This document shows positions 2-53,755 of a stretch of 64,000 nt of DNA, in pieces. The position numbers and the translations under genes were made by a program. The notes beneath the pieces were generated by a model. That model searched no databases. It saw only the letters and a program-made list of their open reading frames with translations, and was not told the DNA's origin. Within the stretch, counting starts at the first letter, position 1; each line of letters opens with the position of its first letter. The stretch is from the IMG/VR virus record IMGVR_UViG_3300020473_000013, positions 160,854 through 224,853 of that record; one strand, given 5' to 3'.

Positions 2-697
2 CCGGCTGCTAAGACTCGCGGTAAGTCCCAGGCAGCCAAGGCGCGAACTCAGGCCACCAAAGTGAACAAGCTCCTCCGCCAGTTCTCTGGTGAAGATAAG
101 GAAGTGGTTCGCTCCGTCGTCGAGTCCCTGCGAGATAACGACTTAGAGTCCGCTGGTCACACCCTGAAGACCGCAGACACTGCCGTGCGGGAACCTGTGC
201 TCGATGTCATCGACCGTGAGTATTGGCCTGCGCTCGGGTTCAAAGCCCCTGTCTCTAAGCCGTCATCTTCTCGCCGCAAGAAAGCTGCCCGGAAGCCGCA
301 GACCAAGGCCAGCAAGCATCCTGGGCTGGAGATTCCGCAGGGCCAGACAGCCAAGCAGGACAAGCAGGGCGAGAACCTGAAGCGTATCGCCGAGAAGGAT
401 ATTACGCCTACGCTCAAAAAATTCGGCCTGAAGTTGGAGCGTGTTGCTGGTTCTCCTTCCGACTGGGTCGCTACAACTGCTGTCGATGCTAAGACTATCC
501 GCACTATCAAGGACACGTTCCAGAATGCGGGGTGGAAGATCGACTATCGGAAAGGAGGCAGTAAGACGCGCCGGCGAGGTGTTGGAGGCTCCTTCACGTA
601 CATGAACATCGCTCTAACAGGAGCCAATCGCCACATCACCATTCAAACCACAGGCAAGAGCAAAGGCCGTCTCGTCATTCGCTCTGGGAAAAGCTAA
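2..697 (+). CDS. Hypothetical Lys/Arg-rich protein, 5'-truncated by the window edge
   Basis: Frame is open from position 2 to TAA at 695-697, with typical phage codon usage. Confidence 0.75.
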   Translation, partial: PAAKTRGKSQAAKARTQATKVNKLLRQFSGEDKEVVRSVVESLRDNDLESAGHTLKTADTAVREPVLDVIDREYWPALGFKAPVSKPSSSRRKKAARKPQTKASKHPGLEIPQGQTAKQDKQGENLKRIAEKDITPTLKKFGLKLERVAGSPSDWVATTAVDAKTIRTIKDTFQNAGWKIDYRKGGSKTRRRGVGGSFTYMNIALTGANRHITIQTTGKSKGRLVIRSGKS

Positions 698-709
698 CCG
701 GAAGGGCCT

Positions 710-1033
710 ATGGTAACTAAACTGAAAGACTCCAACTTCTCGGAGGCGCTTGCTTCGGAGAAGCCTGTTCTCGTCCTGTTTAGTGCGCACTGGAGCGGTC
801 ACTCTGAACTAATGGAGAAGGTCGTCGAAGGTATCGCTGAACGGGACGATTCTATCGACATCTATACGGCACCTGCCGTCGATTGTACGAGGACTATCGC
901 CAAGTTTGGTATTCGTACCGTTCCCACGCTGGCTCTGTTCGATCAGTCAACGTTGGTTGGTATACGTATCGGCCCTCAGCTTTCGGAGAATGTCACCAAA
1001 TTCATCCAATCCTCCTTAAAGAAGGAATCATGA
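710..1033 (+). CDS. Thioredoxin-fold protein with a degenerate active site (WSGHS instead of WCGPC)
   Basis: 107 aa; KPVLVLFSAHWSGHS...FGIRTVPTLALF (cis-Pro loop) matches the TrxA layout; both active-site Cys are Ser. Confidence 0.85.
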   Translation: MVTKLKDSNFSEALASEKPVLVLFSAHWSGHSELMEKVVEGIAERDDSIDIYTAPAVDCTRTIAKFGIRTVPTLALFDQSTLVGIRIGPQLSENVTKFIQSSLKKES

Positions 1034-1098
1034 TGGGTACGTCTCGGGTGTTGCTACACGGTGTAAAGACATAGTGATACCTGAAGTACGAGGCCGCT

Positions 1099-1275
1099 AT
1101 GTTCGATAACAGTTGCATCACCCCGCTCCGCAAGCACAAGCCACACATCGTCCTGATAGGAGGCTACTGGAGAGTAAGCAAGCTCCACAAGCCTTACATC
1201 AACAGTGTGTGGTGGAATCACGCGCACGCCTTTATCACGCGCCTCAATTCCGAGCAGCGTCCCAATGAAGCCTAA
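1099..1275 (+). CDS. Small hypothetical protein (58 aa, MFDNSCITPLRKHKPHIVLIGGYWRVSK...), below the ORF-track cutoff
   Basis: GAGG upstream of ATG 1099, TAA 1273-1275; preceded by the TGTAAAGA motif and followed by a terminator. Confidence 0.65.
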   Translation: MFDNSCITPLRKHKPHIVLIGGYWRVSKLHKPYINSVWWNHAHAFITRLNSEQRPNEA

Positions 1276-1277
1276 GG

Positions 1278-1313
1278 AAAAGCCCCGATCGCCTAGTGCC
1301 TTCGGGGCTTTTT
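1278..1313 (+). terminator. Intrinsic (possibly bidirectional) terminator
   Basis: AAAAGCCCCGA...TCGGGGCTTTTT inverted repeat. Confidence 0.8.
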
Positions 1314-1327
1314 CGTGTCTATGGAAC

Positions 1328-1335
1328 TGTAAATA
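1328..1335 (+). promoter_or_regulatory. Recurrent TGTAAA(T/G)A phage promoter-like motif (representative copy)
   Basis: Intergenic copies at 1062, 1328, 6985, 9376, 22714, 35826, 42160, 51889, 54063, 55816, 57864 and 58585, all just upstream of + strand genes. Confidence 0.7.
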
Positions 1336-1375: not shown

Positions 1376-4357
1376 ATGAAGAAGCCCAAGTATGTAGACT
1401 TGAGCTACAGGTTCTCCCCATCGTATCGGAATCTCCAAAACGATTTCAGTTACGTGCAGTTGGCCAAGCATAAGACCTCGAAGTCTAAGGAGAAGATTCT
1501 CCTTGTGCTGGACTACATGCCTACGGAGGACCTGAAGTCTGGTCGTATTCTCTCAGGTGCCACAGGGACGTTGCTCAAACGCATCCTCCAGGTATCCAAT
1601 CAGTTTTACGGTGAAGAAAGGACACTCGACAGCTATAACTGGCTAGCGGTGTCCTATCATGCGTTCAAGACCTCTGGTGAGAGCCCTGCCTTCAAGGAGG
1701 GAGCCCACAAGGAATTCCGGAAACGTCTCAACCACATCATTGCTGAGTACAAGCCCGACACGGTGATCACCTTCGGCCCTGATCCTTACAAGGCGCTGAA
1801 TGGCACCAAGATCAACGAGTACAACGGTAAGCTGCACCATCTGTTCGGCGTCCCGACCCCGACCACCATCAAGCACAAGGGCGAGAAGCACAAGTTCAAG
1901 CATGTGCCTTCCCTCAGCCTGAATACGCTGGTGAACGACGCTGGCAAGGGTAGCGAGATGGCGCTCGCCGGTTACGTGGCACGTAACCTCGTGAACGGCC
2001 TACACGGCAAGCTCAAGTACCGCATACCGAAGCGGCCCGACTACCAGACAACACTTATCGACACCGTGGAGAAGTTCGATAAGATGTTGAAGAAGTTGCT
2101 GCGGGCCAAGTACGTGGCAATCGACACGGAGACGGAGAACCTAAACAGGCGCGCTAACAGGATGCTGACGCTCCAGTTCGCCTGTAGTACCAAGCGTGCG
2201 TTCGTTTTACCGTACTTCCACAAGGACAGCCCGTTCACCGCGCAAGAGCTGGAGTACATCGCCAAGAAGCTCCGCAAGTTCTTCGAGGTGAAGAACGAGA
2301 ACAAGTACCACGTATTCGCCAACGCCACGTTCGATCTGACGGTCCTCCGCAAGAACCTCGGCATCCGGTACTTCAAGACGCAGGTGTGGGACCTGTTCGC
2401 CGCCGAGTTCGCGCTCGACGAGAACATGAAGTTCCTTAGCGGCGTCACAGGCCACTATTACTACAGCCTGCTCAACCTGAGTATGCAGTACGGGTGCCCT
2501 GCGTATTACGAGGCGGAGTTCGGCAAGGAGAACAGGAAGACCATTGTCTCCGCCGACCTGAACGACGCGCTCCTGGAATACTGTTCGCTGGACGTTGTGA
2601 TACCGCTGCACATCATGCGGGTCCAGATGGAGCGGGCGGCCGACATCGAATACGAGAAATACGAGTCCATCGTATCGGAGCAGATCAGTGACATGCTCCA
2701 CTCGTTCTCTACGTTCGAGTACAACGGCGCCTACACGGACATCGAGTACCTGTTCTACCTCAAGACGAAGGACAGTCCGATCCGTGCGGAAATGCTCAAG
2801 ATCGAGGAGCGCCTCAAGAATACCAAAGGCGTCCAGAAAGCCAACAAGATACTCAGTAAGAAGAAAGGCGCTCCGACTGTCGGCCTGTGGGGCAAGTCCA
2901 CCTTCGACCTGTTCGACATCGGCAAGCAGGACCACCAGCGCCTCCTGTTCTTCGACATCCTCAAGCTCAAGCCGTTGCAGAAGGGTAAGTCCGGGCACGG
3001 CAAGATCGACAAGAAGTTTCAGGAGAAGTATTCGGACGTCGAGGAGGTCAAGCTCTACTCCGAGCTCCAGAAAGCCAAAAAGCTGTTCAATGCCTACGTC
3101 AAGTCCTTCATCAAGAACTGGGGAGAAGACGAGGACATGCGGTTCGACCGTCGCATCCGTCCTCACTTCAAGTTCCTCGACGTTGTGACGGGTCGTACAT
3201 CAGCCCAGAAGCCCTCGCTTCACCAGATTCCTTCTCGGTCCGAACTAGGCAAGCATATCAAGCGCCTGTTCATCACCGAGGAAGGTCGCATCATGATCAA
3301 GGTCGACTATGCTGCGCACGAGGTGCGCTGTTGGTCCTTGTTCACAGGCGATAAAGATGTGGCCAACCTGTTTGGTAAGGGTATGGACATGCGCCAGCGC
3401 TACAAGCTGGCACCTGATCCTGGCCTCCTCAAGAAGATCGACCTCGAGGGCGACGTTCACAAGATCAACGCCAGTTACTTCTTCGGCGTACCGATCGAGA
3501 AGGTGGACAAGCCGATTCGTAACGCGGTTAAGCAGGTTATCTTCGGTCTGATCTACCAGCAGGGTCTGAAAGGTCTGGCTGAATCGACAGGCCAACCGCT
3601 CGCCGTCATCGAGAAGCTGGTCGAACAGTTCAAGAAGAAGTACCCGGTCGGTGTATCGTGGTTCGACGACATCAAAGGGTTTGCTCGCAATCACCTATAC
3701 GTCGAGTCTCCGCTCGGTCGCCGCCGTCACGTTTGGGGTCTGTTGATTCCCGACGATGCTCCGAATGCTGATTCGTGCAAGGCGCGTAACGAGCGTCAGA
3801 GCGTGAACAGTCCTATTCAGGGTATGGGTTCCGACTTCCTGATCAATGGTAGTCGCCAGATCGAACGCCTACGCTTCGAGCATTTGCAGGAGACCGGTCA
3901 CTACCCTGACTTCTATCAGGCTAACTCGGTGCACGACTCCATCATCTTTAGCTGTGCTATCGAGGACTTCTGGACAGCCATCAAGATCATCGAGGAAGGT
4001 CTCACCGCCGCCGTTGCAGAGGTGTCCTACGAGCGTCACGGTATGGAGTTCCATGTTCCGCTGGAGATCGACTTCGAGATTGGCTCCAACGAGCGTGATG
4101 TCGAGGGTTGGGATTACAGCATGGAGCATCTGTCCAAGATCATCAAGGGTACGGCCAAGACTCACAAGGAGTGGGAATATAAGGCCAAGGTCAAGACGAT
4201 GCACGACGACATCATGTACCAGCAGTACGACCAGATGCCTGATTGGGCTAAGAAGCAGTGCTGGAATCTCGGTTGGAAGCTCAAGGGTATGAAGAAAGAC
4301 CCTCGCTCCAAGAAAGACAAGCACAAGGTTGTCACCGAGAGAAAGAAGGCGGCCTAA
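1376..4357 (+). CDS. polA: Family A DNA polymerase: N-terminal UDG-like domain, 3'-5' exonuclease and polymerase domains
   Basis: ExoI AIDTET; TGRTSAQKPSLHQIP; motif A KVDYAAHEVR; motif B RNAVKQVIFGLIY; motif C VHDS. N-terminal EDLKSGRILSGATGTLL is UDG-4-like. ATG 1376 follows GGAG. Confidence 0.95.
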   Translation: MKKPKYVDLSYRFSPSYRNLQNDFSYVQLAKHKTSKSKEKILLVLDYMPTEDLKSGRILSGATGTLLKRILQVSNQFYGEERTLDSYNWLAVSYHAFKTSGESPAFKEGAHKEFRKRLNHIIAEYKPDTVITFGPDPYKALNGTKINEYNGKLHHLFGVPTPTTIKHKGEKHKFKHVPSLSLNTLVNDAGKGSEMALAGYVARNLVNGLHGKLKYRIPKRPDYQTTLIDTVEKFDKMLKKLLRAKYVAIDTETENLNRRANRMLTLQFACSTKRAFVLPYFHKDSPFTAQELEYIAKKLRKFFEVKNENKYHVFANATFDLTVLRKNLGIRYFKTQVWDLFAAEFALDENMKFLSGVTGHYYYSLLNLSMQYGCPAYYEAEFGKENRKTIVSADLNDALLEYCSLDVVIPLHIMRVQMERAADIEYEKYESIVSEQISDMLHSFSTFEYNGAYTDIEYLFYLKTKDSPIRAEMLKIEERLKNTKGVQKANKILSKKKGAPTVGLWGKSTFDLFDIGKQDHQRLLFFDILKLKPLQKGKSGHGKIDKKFQEKYSDVEEVKLYSELQKAKKLFNAYVKSFIKNWGEDEDMRFDRRIRPHFKFLDVVTGRTSAQKPSLHQIPSRSELGKHIKRLFITEEGRIMIKVDYAAHEVRCWSLFTGDKDVANLFGKGMDMRQRYKLAPDPGLLKKIDLEGDVHKINASYFFGVPIEKVDKPIRNAVKQVIFGLIYQQGLKGLAESTGQPLAVIEKLVEQFKKKYPVGVSWFDDIKGFARNHLYVESPLGRRRHVWGLLIPDDAPNADSCKARNERQSVNSPIQGMGSDFLINGSRQIERLRFEHLQETGHYPDFYQANSVHDSIIFSCAIEDFWTAIKIIEEGLTAAVAEVSYERHGMEFHVPLEIDFEIGSNERDVEGWDYSMEHLSKIIKGTAKTHKEWEYKAKVKTMHDDIMYQQYDQMPDWAKKQCWNLGWKLKGMKKDPRSKKDKHKVVTERKKAA

Positions 4358-51958: not shown

Positions 51959-53755
51959 ATGTCCACACCTGTAGCTTTAGGCCCCACTCTTCCCATCTCC
52001 GAAGAAATCCATCGCACCAAGTACCGCCAGGACGGCGAGACTTTCCGTGAGGCGATGGGGCGTATCGCCAGCACGCTGTCCGACGGCGAGCGGCACTTCT
52101 ACGAATTTCGTGACATCATCCTTCACCAGCGTTTCATGCCGGCTGGCCGTGTGCAGAGCGCCATCGGCAGTCCGCGTCAGACCACAGCCTACAACTGTTT
52201 CGTCAGCCCGCCCATTCCTGATAGCATGGATGGCATCATGGACTGCGCCAAGTTGGCAGCACGCACCATGCGTATGGGTGGCGGTATCGGTTACGACTTT
52301 TCTACCCTGCGTCCTGCTGGCGACCTGATCGTCAGTCTGGAGAGCTCCAGCAGCGGTCCCGTCAGCTTCATGGACATCTTCGATTCCGTGTGTGGGACCA
52401 TCTCCAGCTCAGGTCATCGTCGTGGCGCACAGATGGGCGTGCTGCGTGTCGATCATCCCGACATCGAACAGTTCGTCGAAGCCAAGACCAACAGCAACAA
52501 GCTGACCAACTTCAACATCAGCGTTGGCGTGACCGATGAGTTTATGACGGCGGTGCGTAATAAGGAGCAGTTCGACCTGCGCTTTGACGGTAAGGTGTAC
52601 AAGCGTATCGACGCCCACGCCCTGTGGGAAAAGATCATGCGTGCCACCTGGGACTGGGCGGAGCCTGGCATCCTGTTCATTGATCGCATCAACGAAATGA
52701 ACAACCTGTGGTACTGCGAGACTATCGCCGCCACCAACCCGTGCGCTGAGCAACCGTTGCCGCCGTATGGTGCGTGCCTGCTCGGGTCGTTCAACCTCGT
52801 CAAGTATCTCATCCCGAACCTGATTCGTGACGAAGGCGAGGCGCCGTTCGACTTCGACTGGGATGCTTTCCGCGCAGACATTCCGAATGTCATCCGCGCC
52901 ATGGATAACGTGGTCGATCGTACCATCTATCCTCTGCCGGAGCAGCGCCAGGAAGCGGAAAGCAAGCGCCGCATGGGCATCGGCATCACGGGCTTCGCGA
53001 ACACAAGTGAGGCTATCGGTTACACGTACGGCTCTCCGGAGTGTCTGGCATTCGAGGACGAACTTCTGGAAATGCTGGCGAACGAGGCATACCTCGCATC
53101 CTCCGACCTGGCCGTCGAGAAAGGCAGTTTTCCGCTGTTCAATGCGGACAAGTATCTGGAAGGCAAGTTCATCCAGACCTTGCGCCCCGAAGTACGCGAG
53201 CGCATCCGGCGCAACGGTCTGCGTAACAGCCACCTGCTGTCCATCGCGCCCACAGGCACTATCAGCCTCAGCGCCGACAACGTGAGCAGCGGTATCGAAC
53301 CTCCGTTCATGCACTACTTCGACCGTACCGTCATTCAGTCTGACGGAAGCCAGAAGGTTGAGCGCGTGGATGACTATGCCTATCGCGAACTCAAGATCGA
53401 AGGCCGTACAGCCAATGAGTGTTCCGTGAAGGAGCACCTGGACGTCCTGATCGTGGGAAGCCGCTGGGTGGACAGCGCCGTCTCCAAGACTCTTAACGTT
53501 GGCGATCACGTCACGTGGGAGGAGTTCAAGGACATCTACATGACAGCGTGGCTGCACGGATGTAAGGGCTGCACTACGTTCCGCGCAGCAGGCAAGCGCT
53601 TCGGTATCCTTAATGCAGCTTCGGACGAAGGCGAAGAAGAACAGGACGCTCCGGCCATGGGTGATGCCGTCGATACTTCCGATGAGCTTCAGGAACAACA
53701 GGAAGGTGCCTCCTGTACGTTCGATCCGGCTTCAGGCCGTCGCACCTGTGAGTAA
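51959..53755 (+). CDS. nrdJ: Class II (B12-dependent) ribonucleotide reductase
   Basis: FMPAGRV, AYNCFV, GGGIGYDFS, TNPCAEQPL, IAPTGTIS, C-terminal CTFD...TCE; no ATP cone; no nrdB nearby. Confidence 0.9.
   Translation: MSTPVALGPTLPISEEIHRTKYRQDGETFREAMGRIASTLSDGERHFYEFRDIILHQRFMPAGRVQSAIGSPRQTTAYNCFVSPPIPDSMDGIMDCAKLAARTMRMGGGIGYDFSTLRPAGDLIVSLESSSSGPVSFMDIFDSVCGTISSSGHRRGAQMGVLRVDHPDIEQFVEAKTNSNKLTNFNISVGVTDEFMTAVRNKEQFDLRFDGKVYKRIDAHALWEKIMRATWDWAEPGILFIDRINEMNNLWYCETIAATNPCAEQPLPPYGACLLGSFNLVKYLIPNLIRDEGEAPFDFDWDAFRADIPNVIRAMDNVVDRTIYPLPEQRQEAESKRRMGIGITGFANTSEAIGYTYGSPECLAFEDELLEMLANEAYLASSDLAVEKGSFPLFNADKYLEGKFIQTLRPEVRERIRRNGLRNSHLLSIAPTGTISLSADNVSSGIEPPFMHYFDRTVIQSDGSQKVERVDDYAYRELKIEGRTANECSVKEHLDVLIVGSRWVDSAVSKTLNVGDHVTWEEFKDIYMTAWLHGCKGCTTFRAAGKRFGILNAASDEGEEEQDAPAMGDAVDTSDELQEQQEGASCTFDPASGRRTCE

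What the first reader, a model, noticed from the sequence alone, without database searches (positions are those of the whole stretch)
710..1033. Redox-dead thioredoxin (SxxS) encoded next to a family A polymerase
Seen: an intact Trx fold, but WSGHS replaces WCGPC; the only Cys lies elsewhere. Established: T7 DNA polymerase uses thioredoxin as a processivity factor and does not need its redox cysteines. Inference: a phage-encoded non-redox accessory subunit, or a decoy for thioredoxin-dependent host functions. Caveat: the PolA thumb insert here looks much shorter than the T7 thioredoxin-binding domain, and a clamp gene is also present.
Basis: partly seen in the sequence, partly recalled or inferred. 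Interest (0 to 1): 0.6.

Follow-up and report, generated by a model that had tools for sequence, protein, structure and literature searches.

The report
Cysteine-less thioredoxin family in marine jumbo phages
A marine jumbo phage carries an intact thioredoxin-fold protein that has lost every residue needed for redox chemistry, and the same redox-dead protein is kept just upstream of the DNA polymerase gene in a whole clade of related phages, so it has a conserved non-redox job that is not yet known.

Summary
ORF 710..1033 (+, 107 aa) is a thioredoxin (Trx) fold: Pfam PF00085 at 46 bits, AF2 pLDDT 96, TM 0.95 to solved Trx. WSGHS replaces WCGPC, the buried Asp26 equivalent is Leu, and the cis-Pro is kept.

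It is not recent decay. Eleven homologs at 32-49% identity all lack the cysteines (S-G-x-S/A). They form one clade (96/94) and stand apart from canonical Trx in profile score (>=118 vs <=76 bits). Synonymous sites are saturated (pS 0.7-0.89) while pN is 0.21-0.56.

In all eight loci with downstream sequence the gene lies just upstream of the UDG-exo-PolA gene of marine PaBG-like jumbo phages. These phages form one PolA clade (SH-aLRT 99). Ten relatives outside that clade have no Trx at all.

The T7 analogy is not supported:
- The PolA thumb-tip segment is 38 aa with or without Trx, against 75 aa in T7.
- A clamp and a clamp loader are present.
- A terminator and a conserved promoter-like motif separate the Trx gene from PolA.
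- The co-fold gave no verdict.

Best reading: a redox-inert, partner-binding Trx module serving the replication block. A host-Trx mimic or decoy is the main rival. I rate it a new variant of a known kind, of moderate interest.

The parts
2..697 (+). C-terminal 231 aa of a 357-aa protein with an N-terminal KMPT-N domain (PF20294). The gene starts upstream of the window. It is a variable neighbour of the Trx gene.
   Evidence: Paralogous KMPT-N genes lie before or after the Trx gene in L015 and L028, and are absent in L017, L021, L022, L024 and L035.
710..1033 (+). Cysteine-less thioredoxin-fold protein (107 aa, P0001).
   Evidence: Pfam 46 bits; PDB sequence alignments; AF2 pLDDT 96 and TM 0.95 to Trx; family conservation.
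791..805 (+). Codons for W28-S29-G30-H31-S32, the former WCGPC active-site loop.
   Evidence: S29 and G30 are invariant across the nine family members aligned in A4. The P0154 and P0155 sequences show S-G at the matching place by eye. The position of S32 is S or A.
923..925 (+). Codon for the retained cis-proline (P72, the E. coli Pro76 equivalent), inside the conserved KFGIRTVPTLALF segment.
1099..1275 (+). Conserved small gene (58 aa) between the Trx gene and PolA.
   Evidence: 44-56% identity to 58- and 55-aa ORFs at the same place in L015 and L028. Called as a gene in the public assemblies.
1278..1313 (+). Intrinsic-terminator-like GC hairpin followed by a T-run; it ends the upstream transcription unit.
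   Evidence: Fold z-score -3.7. An equivalent hairpin plus T-run precedes PolA in all relatives examined. Contigs from four RNA libraries all stop at 1286 (contigs cannot prove an RNA end).
1325..1335 (+). AACTGTAAATA, a conserved phage promoter-like motif upstream of PolA.
   Evidence: Present before PolA in all Trx-bearing loci and in PaBG, Lu11 and HRDY3. A putative middle/late promoter is annotated in Lu11 in the same intergenic region, 28-43 nt before PolA. The core CTGTAAATA occurs only 11 times in 224.8 kb.
1376..4357 (+). UDG-like / 3'-5' exonuclease / family A DNA polymerase (993 aa).
   Evidence: The domain layout is described for PaBG in PMC7412058.
4811..6001 (+). Beta-clamp-like processivity factor (396 aa).
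   Evidence: PHROG 947 at E 1e-19; weak Pfam DNA_pol3_beta_2 hit.

Best explanation
P0001 is a functional but redox-inert thioredoxin-fold protein. One ancestor of a marine clade of PaBG-like ('Lupandier'-type) jumbo phages acquired a thioredoxin and lost both active-site cysteines and the buried catalytic Asp. The clade has since kept it as a small protein-binding module.

Shown:
- The fold is intact.
- All redox residues are gone in every member.
- The three loops that form the canonical Trx partner-binding groove stay conserved: W-S-G, the cis-Pro loop and the G88 loop.
- The gene is under purifying selection.
- It holds a fixed place as the last, or nearly last, gene of the SNF2-helicase transcription unit, directly in front of the PolA terminator and promoter.

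Inferred:
- It works by docking a partner in the Trx groove without thiol chemistry, as a structural subunit or holdase.
- The partner is a protein of the replication gene block. PolA is the first candidate by position, but it would bind at a site other than a T7-type thumb insert.
For: - Fold.
- Redox residues lost in all members: C32 to S (invariant), C35 to S or A, D26 to L, F or V. The cis-Pro, the W-S-G loop, G88 and a family-specific invariant Arg86 are kept.
- Discrete family: one clade at 96/94. Profile scores are >=118 bits for members against <=76 bits for canonical Trx.
- Purifying selection: pS 0.67-0.89 (saturated) against pN 0.21-0.56.
- Position: upstream of PolA in 8 of 8 loci, while the gene on the other side varies (KMPT-N, Macro-DUF4326, unrelated small ORFs).
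- Single gain: Trx-bearing phages form one PolA clade, SH-aLRT 99. PF00085 is absent from 10 relatives' records, 7 of them complete.
- Sequence 100% identical to the gene is present in four metatranscriptome libraries from two samples.
- Precedent, from my own knowledge: a Cys-to-Ser E. coli Trx still supports T7 DNA polymerase and f1 assembly.
Against: - There is no direct evidence for any partner.
- PolA shows no indel linked to the presence of Trx: the thumb-tip segment is 38 aa in all relatives.
- PolA is 70-78% identical across the clade, while the Trx-like protein is only 32-49% identical. That is faster than one might expect for an obligate polymerase subunit.
- A terminator and a separate promoter-like motif lie between the gene and PolA. 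Adjacency may therefore reflect an accessory-gene slot at an operon end rather than functional coupling.
- A clamp and a clamp loader already provide a route to processivity.
Confidence: 0.45

Rival explanations
1. Host-directed thioredoxin mimic. The protein keeps the Trx docking surface but cannot turn over. It would therefore sit non-productively on host Trx partners (thioredoxin reductase, Trx-dependent enzymes, or Trx-activated toxins and defence effectors) and block or divert them.
For: - The partner-binding loops are retained while the chemistry is abolished.
- It evolves several-fold faster than the neighbouring PolA, as host-interaction proteins often do.
- It lies in a variable accessory-gene slot next to Macro-DUF4326 and KMPT-N genes.
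- It is transcriptionally separate from PolA.
- Solved structures show Trx serving as cofactor of a bacterial Rhs toxin (8s2n).
Against: - No host is known and no target is identified.
- There is no PADLOC match.
- The phage has its own RNR large-subunit-like gene, no small subunit and no redox-active Trx or Grx. It probably depends on the host redoxin system, and a general Trx-system blocker would starve that.
Confidence: 0.25
2. T7-type processivity factor. The protein clamps onto a loop of the PolA thumb and tethers the polymerase to the primer-template, as E. coli Trx does on T7 gp5.
For: Conserved adjacency to PolA. Redox cysteines are dispensable in the T7 system (my own knowledge).
Against: - The thumb-tip segment is 38 aa against 75 aa in T7 gp5, and its length is identical in Trx-less PaBG, Lu11, HRDY3 and Yoloswag.
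- A beta-clamp and a clamp loader are encoded.
- G74 of E. coli Trx is not conserved. From my own knowledge this position matters for T7.
- A published AlphaFold3 test of another phage-encoded Trx (Syn5) with its own polymerase also found no T7-like complex (bioRxiv 10.1101/2025.10.05.680603).
Confidence: 0.08
3. Redox-independent folding or assembly helper for virion or other large phage proteins. This would resemble the f1 assembly requirement for Trx, or the Cys-less b/b' domains of PDI.
For: Trx-fold holdases without cysteines exist (PDI b domains, from my own knowledge). One member was auto-named 'thioredoxin-like negative regulator of GroEL' by JGI.
Against: The gene sits in the replication block, not among structural genes. 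The JGI name is automatic and untested.
Confidence: 0.1
4. A decaying remnant of an acquired host trx gene with no function.
For: Catalytic residues are lost. The relatives do without it.
Against: The reading frame is intact in 11 lineages. Synonymous sites are saturated while pN is far lower. Fold-determining and groove residues are conserved, and the locus is fixed.
Confidence: 0.03

Closest known systems
Bacterial thioredoxin 1 (TrxA; Pfam PF00085, NCBIfam TIGR01068)
   Same: Same fold, length and secondary-structure order (TM 0.90-0.95). Keeps the cis-Pro loop, the Trp before the active site and the Gly92-equivalent loop.
   Different: No CxxC and no buried Asp26, so no thiol-disulfide exchange is possible. 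It scores 41 bits against an equivalog cut-off of 96.8 and is 23-34% identical to canonical Trx.
E. coli thioredoxin as the processivity subunit of T7 DNA polymerase (gp5-Trx)
   Same: A Trx-fold protein associated with a phage family A polymerase. That role does not need the cysteines (my own knowledge).
   Different: Here the protein is phage-encoded. The polymerase lacks the roughly 75-aa thioredoxin-binding insert, and the phage has a clamp and clamp loader. No interaction is shown.
Phage-encoded redox-active thioredoxins (N4-like roseophages, cyanophage Syn5, SP-15 and others)
   Same: Small phage Trx genes inside nucleotide-metabolism or replication regions.
   Different: In the one phylogenetic survey I read, the retained phage Trx homologs all carried CGPC or CAPC, apart from two with CQPC or CKPC. 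That survey selected for the canonical site. Syn5 Trx is redox-active and is proposed to serve RNR (bioRxiv 10.1101/2025.10.05.680603). The family here has no cysteines at the site.
Cellular redox-inactive Trx-fold modules (PDI b/b' domains, Dim1/TXNL4A, CnoX/YbbN with SxxC)
   Same: A Trx fold reused purely as a protein-binding surface.
   Different: These are resemblances from my own knowledge only. No specific sequence relationship was detected: the best hits are catalytic Trx and PDI a-type domains.

Membership tests
Thioredoxin fold / Pfam PF00085 | Sequence match above the Pfam gathering score, and a beta-alpha-beta-alpha-beta-alpha-beta-beta-alpha fold | tested here: met
   46.4 bits against a cut-off of 23.5; AF2 pLDDT 96; TM 0.95 to 6esx.
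Catalytic thioredoxin (TrxA equivalog, TIGR01068 / NF006898) | CxxC (WCGPC) active-site dithiol | tested here: not met
   WSGHS at residues 28-32. Every family member has S at the first position and S or A at the second.
Catalytic thioredoxin (TrxA equivalog, TIGR01068 / NF006898) | Buried Asp26 general acid/base | tested here: not met
   Leu in the window protein; L, F or V in all nine aligned members.
Catalytic thioredoxin (TrxA equivalog, TIGR01068 / NF006898) | Score above the NCBIfam equivalog cut-off | tested here: not met
   41.2 bits against 96.8 for TIGR01068; 31.7 against 138 for NF006898.
Catalytic thioredoxin (TrxA equivalog, TIGR01068 / NF006898) | cis-Pro76 loop | tested here: met
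   VPT conserved; the Pro is invariant.
Catalytic thioredoxin (TrxA equivalog, TIGR01068 / NF006898) | Disulfide reductase activity (insulin or DTNB assay, TrxR-dependent) | not testable with these tools
   Needs purified protein. Predicted to be absent.
T7-type Trx-polymerase processivity pair | Thioredoxin-binding insert of about 70 aa at the tip of the PolA thumb | tested here: not met
   The segment is 38 aa against 75 aa in T7 gp5, with the same length in Trx-less relatives.
T7-type Trx-polymerase processivity pair | Stable 1:1 complex of the Trx with the polymerase | tested here: inconclusive
   Co-fold of PolA 215-993 with the protein gave 'no answer'. That is neither for nor against binding.
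T7-type Trx-polymerase processivity pair | Increase of polymerase processivity in vitro | not testable with these tools
   Needs a biochemical assay.
PaBG-like ('Lupandier') jumbo phage replication module | SNF2 giant helicase, UDG-exo-PolA, beta-clamp and UvsW-like helicase in that gene order | tested here: met
   PolA is 58% identical to that of PaBG. The module is described in PMC7412058.

The most novel reading that the evidence does not exclude
A previously undescribed family of phage-encoded, obligately redox-dead thioredoxins. It would act either as a dedicated subunit of the UDG-PolA/clamp replisome through an interface unlike the T7 thioredoxin-binding domain, or as a thioredoxin mimic that jams host Trx-dependent enzymes or Trx-activated defence toxins. 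Either would be a new way for a virus to use the Trx docking surface without its chemistry.
Probability: 0.3. Interest if true: 0.7.

Novelty: new variant of a known kind. Interest (0 to 1): 0.55.

Why it matters
Thioredoxin is the textbook case of a host redox enzyme that a phage (T7) uses for a non-redox structural job.

This family would be the reverse experiment done by nature. A phage lineage took a thioredoxin, removed all of its chemistry, and has kept the shell at one locus beside its polymerase for long enough to randomise synonymous sites. Finding the partner would show what the bare Trx docking groove is good for in a virus.

It also warns against annotating such genes as 'thioredoxin' or as auxiliary redox or metabolic genes in marine viromes.

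Tried and rejected
- **Co-fold.** PolA residues 215-993 with the Trx-like protein, both given with alignments, scored 0.00 in two runs: 'no answer', so the controls were not run. I do not use this as evidence either way. The N-terminal UDG-like domain could not be included because of the size limit.
- **Word-index search.** With the single protein it found only itself. The relatives came from the exhaustive HMMER search and a profile search.
- **The search for related loci with the Trx family alignment.** It failed because no stretch was conserved enough. I used PolA as bait instead.
- **Population variation.** Ten public contigs carry the gene with 0 nucleotide differences, so no within-population dN/dS was possible. 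One variant protein differs by L21V.
- **dN/dS ratios.** They cannot be computed properly because dS is saturated. Only pN << pS is used.
- **Megablast of the region against isolate phages.** It found only a 120-nt PolA patch.
- **PADLOC.** No match.
- **Charge and pI.** Unremarkable compared with canonical Trx.
- **The tool's terminator scan.** It missed the hairpin at 1278-1313. I found it by folding.
- **Possible intein in the PolA of L022.** Pfam gave no Hint-domain hit in the short stretch held.
- **Literature.** The searches found no description of Cys-less phage thioredoxins.

Full report
**1. Where the window comes from**

The window is the last 64 kb (bases 160854-224853) of a 224,853-bp virus record with direct terminal repeats. 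The same sequence has been assembled repeatedly from Tara and other marine metagenomes. Its family A polymerase is 58%, 54% and 53% identical to those of Pseudomonas phages PaBG, Lu11 and HRDY3. It is 46-47% identical to those of the Erwinia and Dickeya jumbo phages. Gene order around it matches the PaBG-type replication module: giant SNF2 helicase, small genes, UDG-exo-PolA, small gene, beta-clamp, two small genes, UvsW-like helicase. The PaBG paper describes this module (PMC7412058).

**2. The observation**

ORF 710..1033 (+) encodes 107 aa.
- Pfam Thioredoxin matches end to end at 46 bits, against a cut-off of 23.5.
- phmmer against PDB sequences aligns W28-S29-G30-H31-S32 exactly onto WCGPC/WCGHC.
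- An AF2 model built on an alignment has pLDDT 96. It superposes on solved thioredoxins at TM 0.90-0.95.
- Against E. coli TrxA: Cys32 is Ser, Cys35 is Ser and the buried Asp26 is Leu. Trp28, Gly33, cis-Pro76, Thr77 and Gly92 are retained.
- The one cysteine (C59) is not conserved in relatives.

**3. Is it recent decay? No.**

- The exhaustive HMMER search of 1.8 billion representatives and a profile search recovered ten further proteins of 104-113 aa, 32-49% identical to the query.
- Their motifs at the active site are WSGHS, WSGHA, WSGIS, WSGLS, LSGHS, YSGTS and YSGIS. None has a cysteine there. All nine members aligned to E. coli TrxA have L, F or V at the Asp26 position.
- The nine members then known form one clade among 36 single-domain thioredoxins, with support 96/94.
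- With a family profile, members score 118 bits or more. The best canonical thioredoxin scores 76 bits.
- Between members, synonymous differences are saturated (pS 0.67-0.89) while non-synonymous differences are 0.21-0.56. The protein has therefore been under purifying selection for a long time after losing its chemistry.
- The conserved segments are the W-S-G loop, KFGIRTVPTLALF (the cis-Pro loop and the strand after it) and G-V-R-I-G, which carries a family-specific invariant Arg86. In canonical thioredoxins these loops form the partner-binding groove. That last statement is established knowledge, not tested here.

**4. Synteny and origin**

Every locus that extends downstream shows the gene on the same strand, just upstream of a PolA that is 70-78% identical to the window's PolA where measured (alignment A3). 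The loci are the window, L015, L017, L021, L022, L024, L028 and L035.
- In L015 and L028, one KMPT-N-domain gene and a 55-58-aa gene lie between the Trx gene and PolA.
- In the window, only the 58-aa gene lies between them.
- The gene on the upstream side varies: KMPT-N protein, Macro-DUF4326 protein, or unrelated ORFs.

On a PolA tree the seven Trx-bearing phages are one clade, SH-aLRT 99. PF00085 is absent from the whole records of ten relatives outside that clade: PaBG, Lu11, HRDY3, Yoloswag, NCTB and five IMG/VR contigs. Seven of those records are complete. The simplest history is one acquisition on the stem of this marine clade. No cysteine-bearing intermediate is known.

**5. Tests of the T7 analogy**

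- Aligned with T7 gp5, the thumb-tip segment that carries the thioredoxin-binding domain is 75 aa in T7. It is 38 aa in the window's PolA. It is also 38 aa in every Trx-bearing relative and in Trx-less PaBG, Lu11, HRDY3 and Yoloswag. Gaining the Trx gene left no length change there.
- The phage encodes a beta-clamp two genes downstream of PolA and a clamp loader.
- Between the Trx/58-aa genes and PolA lies a strong hairpin plus T-run (1278-1313; fold z-score -3.7), followed by AACTGTAAATA (1325-1335). The same terminator-plus-motif pair precedes PolA in all relatives, Trx-bearing or not. In Lu11 a putative middle/late promoter is annotated 28-43 nt upstream of PolA, in the stretch where the motif lies.
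- The Trx gene is therefore the distal gene of the upstream SNF2-helicase unit, and PolA starts its own unit.
- Contigs from four metatranscriptome libraries (two samples, one study) cover 676-1286 at 100% identity, and all of them end at 1286. This fits a transcript boundary. Contigs cannot prove an RNA end, and DNA carry-over is not excluded.

**6. Other context**

The genome encodes an RNR large-subunit-like protein (window 51959..53755). It has no small subunit, no glutaredoxin and no other PF00085 protein. The phage RNR therefore probably depends on host redoxins, and this protein cannot supply that function. In the one phylogenetic survey I read, the retained phage Trx homologs carried CGPC or CAPC, apart from two with CQPC or CKPC; that survey selected for the canonical site. 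Syn5 Trx is redox-active, and its authors likewise found no T7-like complex with its own polymerase (bioRxiv 10.1101/2025.10.05.680603). I found no paper describing a cysteine-less phage thioredoxin family.

**7. Interpretation**

- Shown: a conserved, selected, redox-incapable Trx-fold protein family, restricted to one clade of marine jumbo phages and fixed at the boundary between the helicase unit and the PolA unit.
- Inferred: it acts by binding a partner in the retained Trx groove.
- I rank a role with a replication-block protein first (0.45). PolA is the positional favourite, but not through a T7-type insert.
- A host-thioredoxin mimic or decoy comes second (0.25). Fast evolution, the accessory-gene slot and transcriptional separation from PolA favour it. 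The phage's own likely dependence on host redoxins weighs against it.
- A strict T7-type processivity factor (0.08), an assembly holdase (0.1) and a dead relic (0.03) follow.

**8. Novelty and score**

The fold and the idea of non-redox Trx use are known. A phage-encoded, obligately cysteine-less Trx family with conserved synteny appears undescribed. I rate it a new variant of a known kind, with interest 0.55. The partner and mechanism remain to be found by experiment.

Noticed in passing
window 1278-1313 and 1325-1335; the same elements upstream of PolA in L001, L002, L003, L015, L017, L021, L022, L024 and L028: A terminator hairpin plus T-run, followed by the motif AACTGTAAATA, precedes PolA throughout the PaBG-like group. 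The core CTGTAAATA occurs only 11 times in the 224.8-kb genome. One copy lies at window 4576, ahead of the clamp gene. It is probably a phage-specific promoter class.
   Followed up: partly
window 1099-1275 (+): A conserved 58-aa gene (MFDN..KPHI..YWRVS..KP..AH..LN), with 44-56% identical counterparts directly upstream of PolA in L015 and L028. It has no family match.
   Followed up: partly
window 2-697 (+), whole gene at L005:4915-5988; paralogs at L015:6991-7989, L015:8325-10061 and L028:3761-5692: Proteins of 281-643 aa with an N-terminal KMPT-N domain (PF20294, 'KTSC and metallopeptidase N-terminal fusion domain'). They flank the Trx gene on either side and vary in length and copy number between phages.
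   Followed up: partly
L022:3792-5945: The PolA of this relative departs from all others right after the conserved HEVRC, continuing with LSLDSYI... up to the contig end. This looks like the start of an intein or another insertion. Pfam finds no Hint domain in the roughly 65 aa available.
   Followed up: partly
window 51959-53755 (+): An RNR large-subunit-like ORF (598 aa; PF02867 at 349 bits). The genome has no small subunit and no glutaredoxin or NrdH, which suggests a class II enzyme that relies on host redoxins.
   Followed up: partly
window 1376-2020 (PolA residues 1-215): The N-terminal UDG-like domain of PolA contains no cysteines, so it cannot hold the 4Fe-4S cluster typical of family 4 UDGs. 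Whether it is an active glycosylase is open.
   Followed up: no
window 676-1286: Contigs from four metatranscriptome libraries (two samples) all end at base 1286, inside the 5' arm of the terminator hairpin. Coverage of the first 300 nt or so of PolA is missing or thin in all four.
   Followed up: partly
L021:1673-2467: In one relative, the gene immediately upstream of the Cys-less Trx encodes a Macro plus DUF4326 fusion protein, a candidate for ADP-ribose processing.
   Followed up: no
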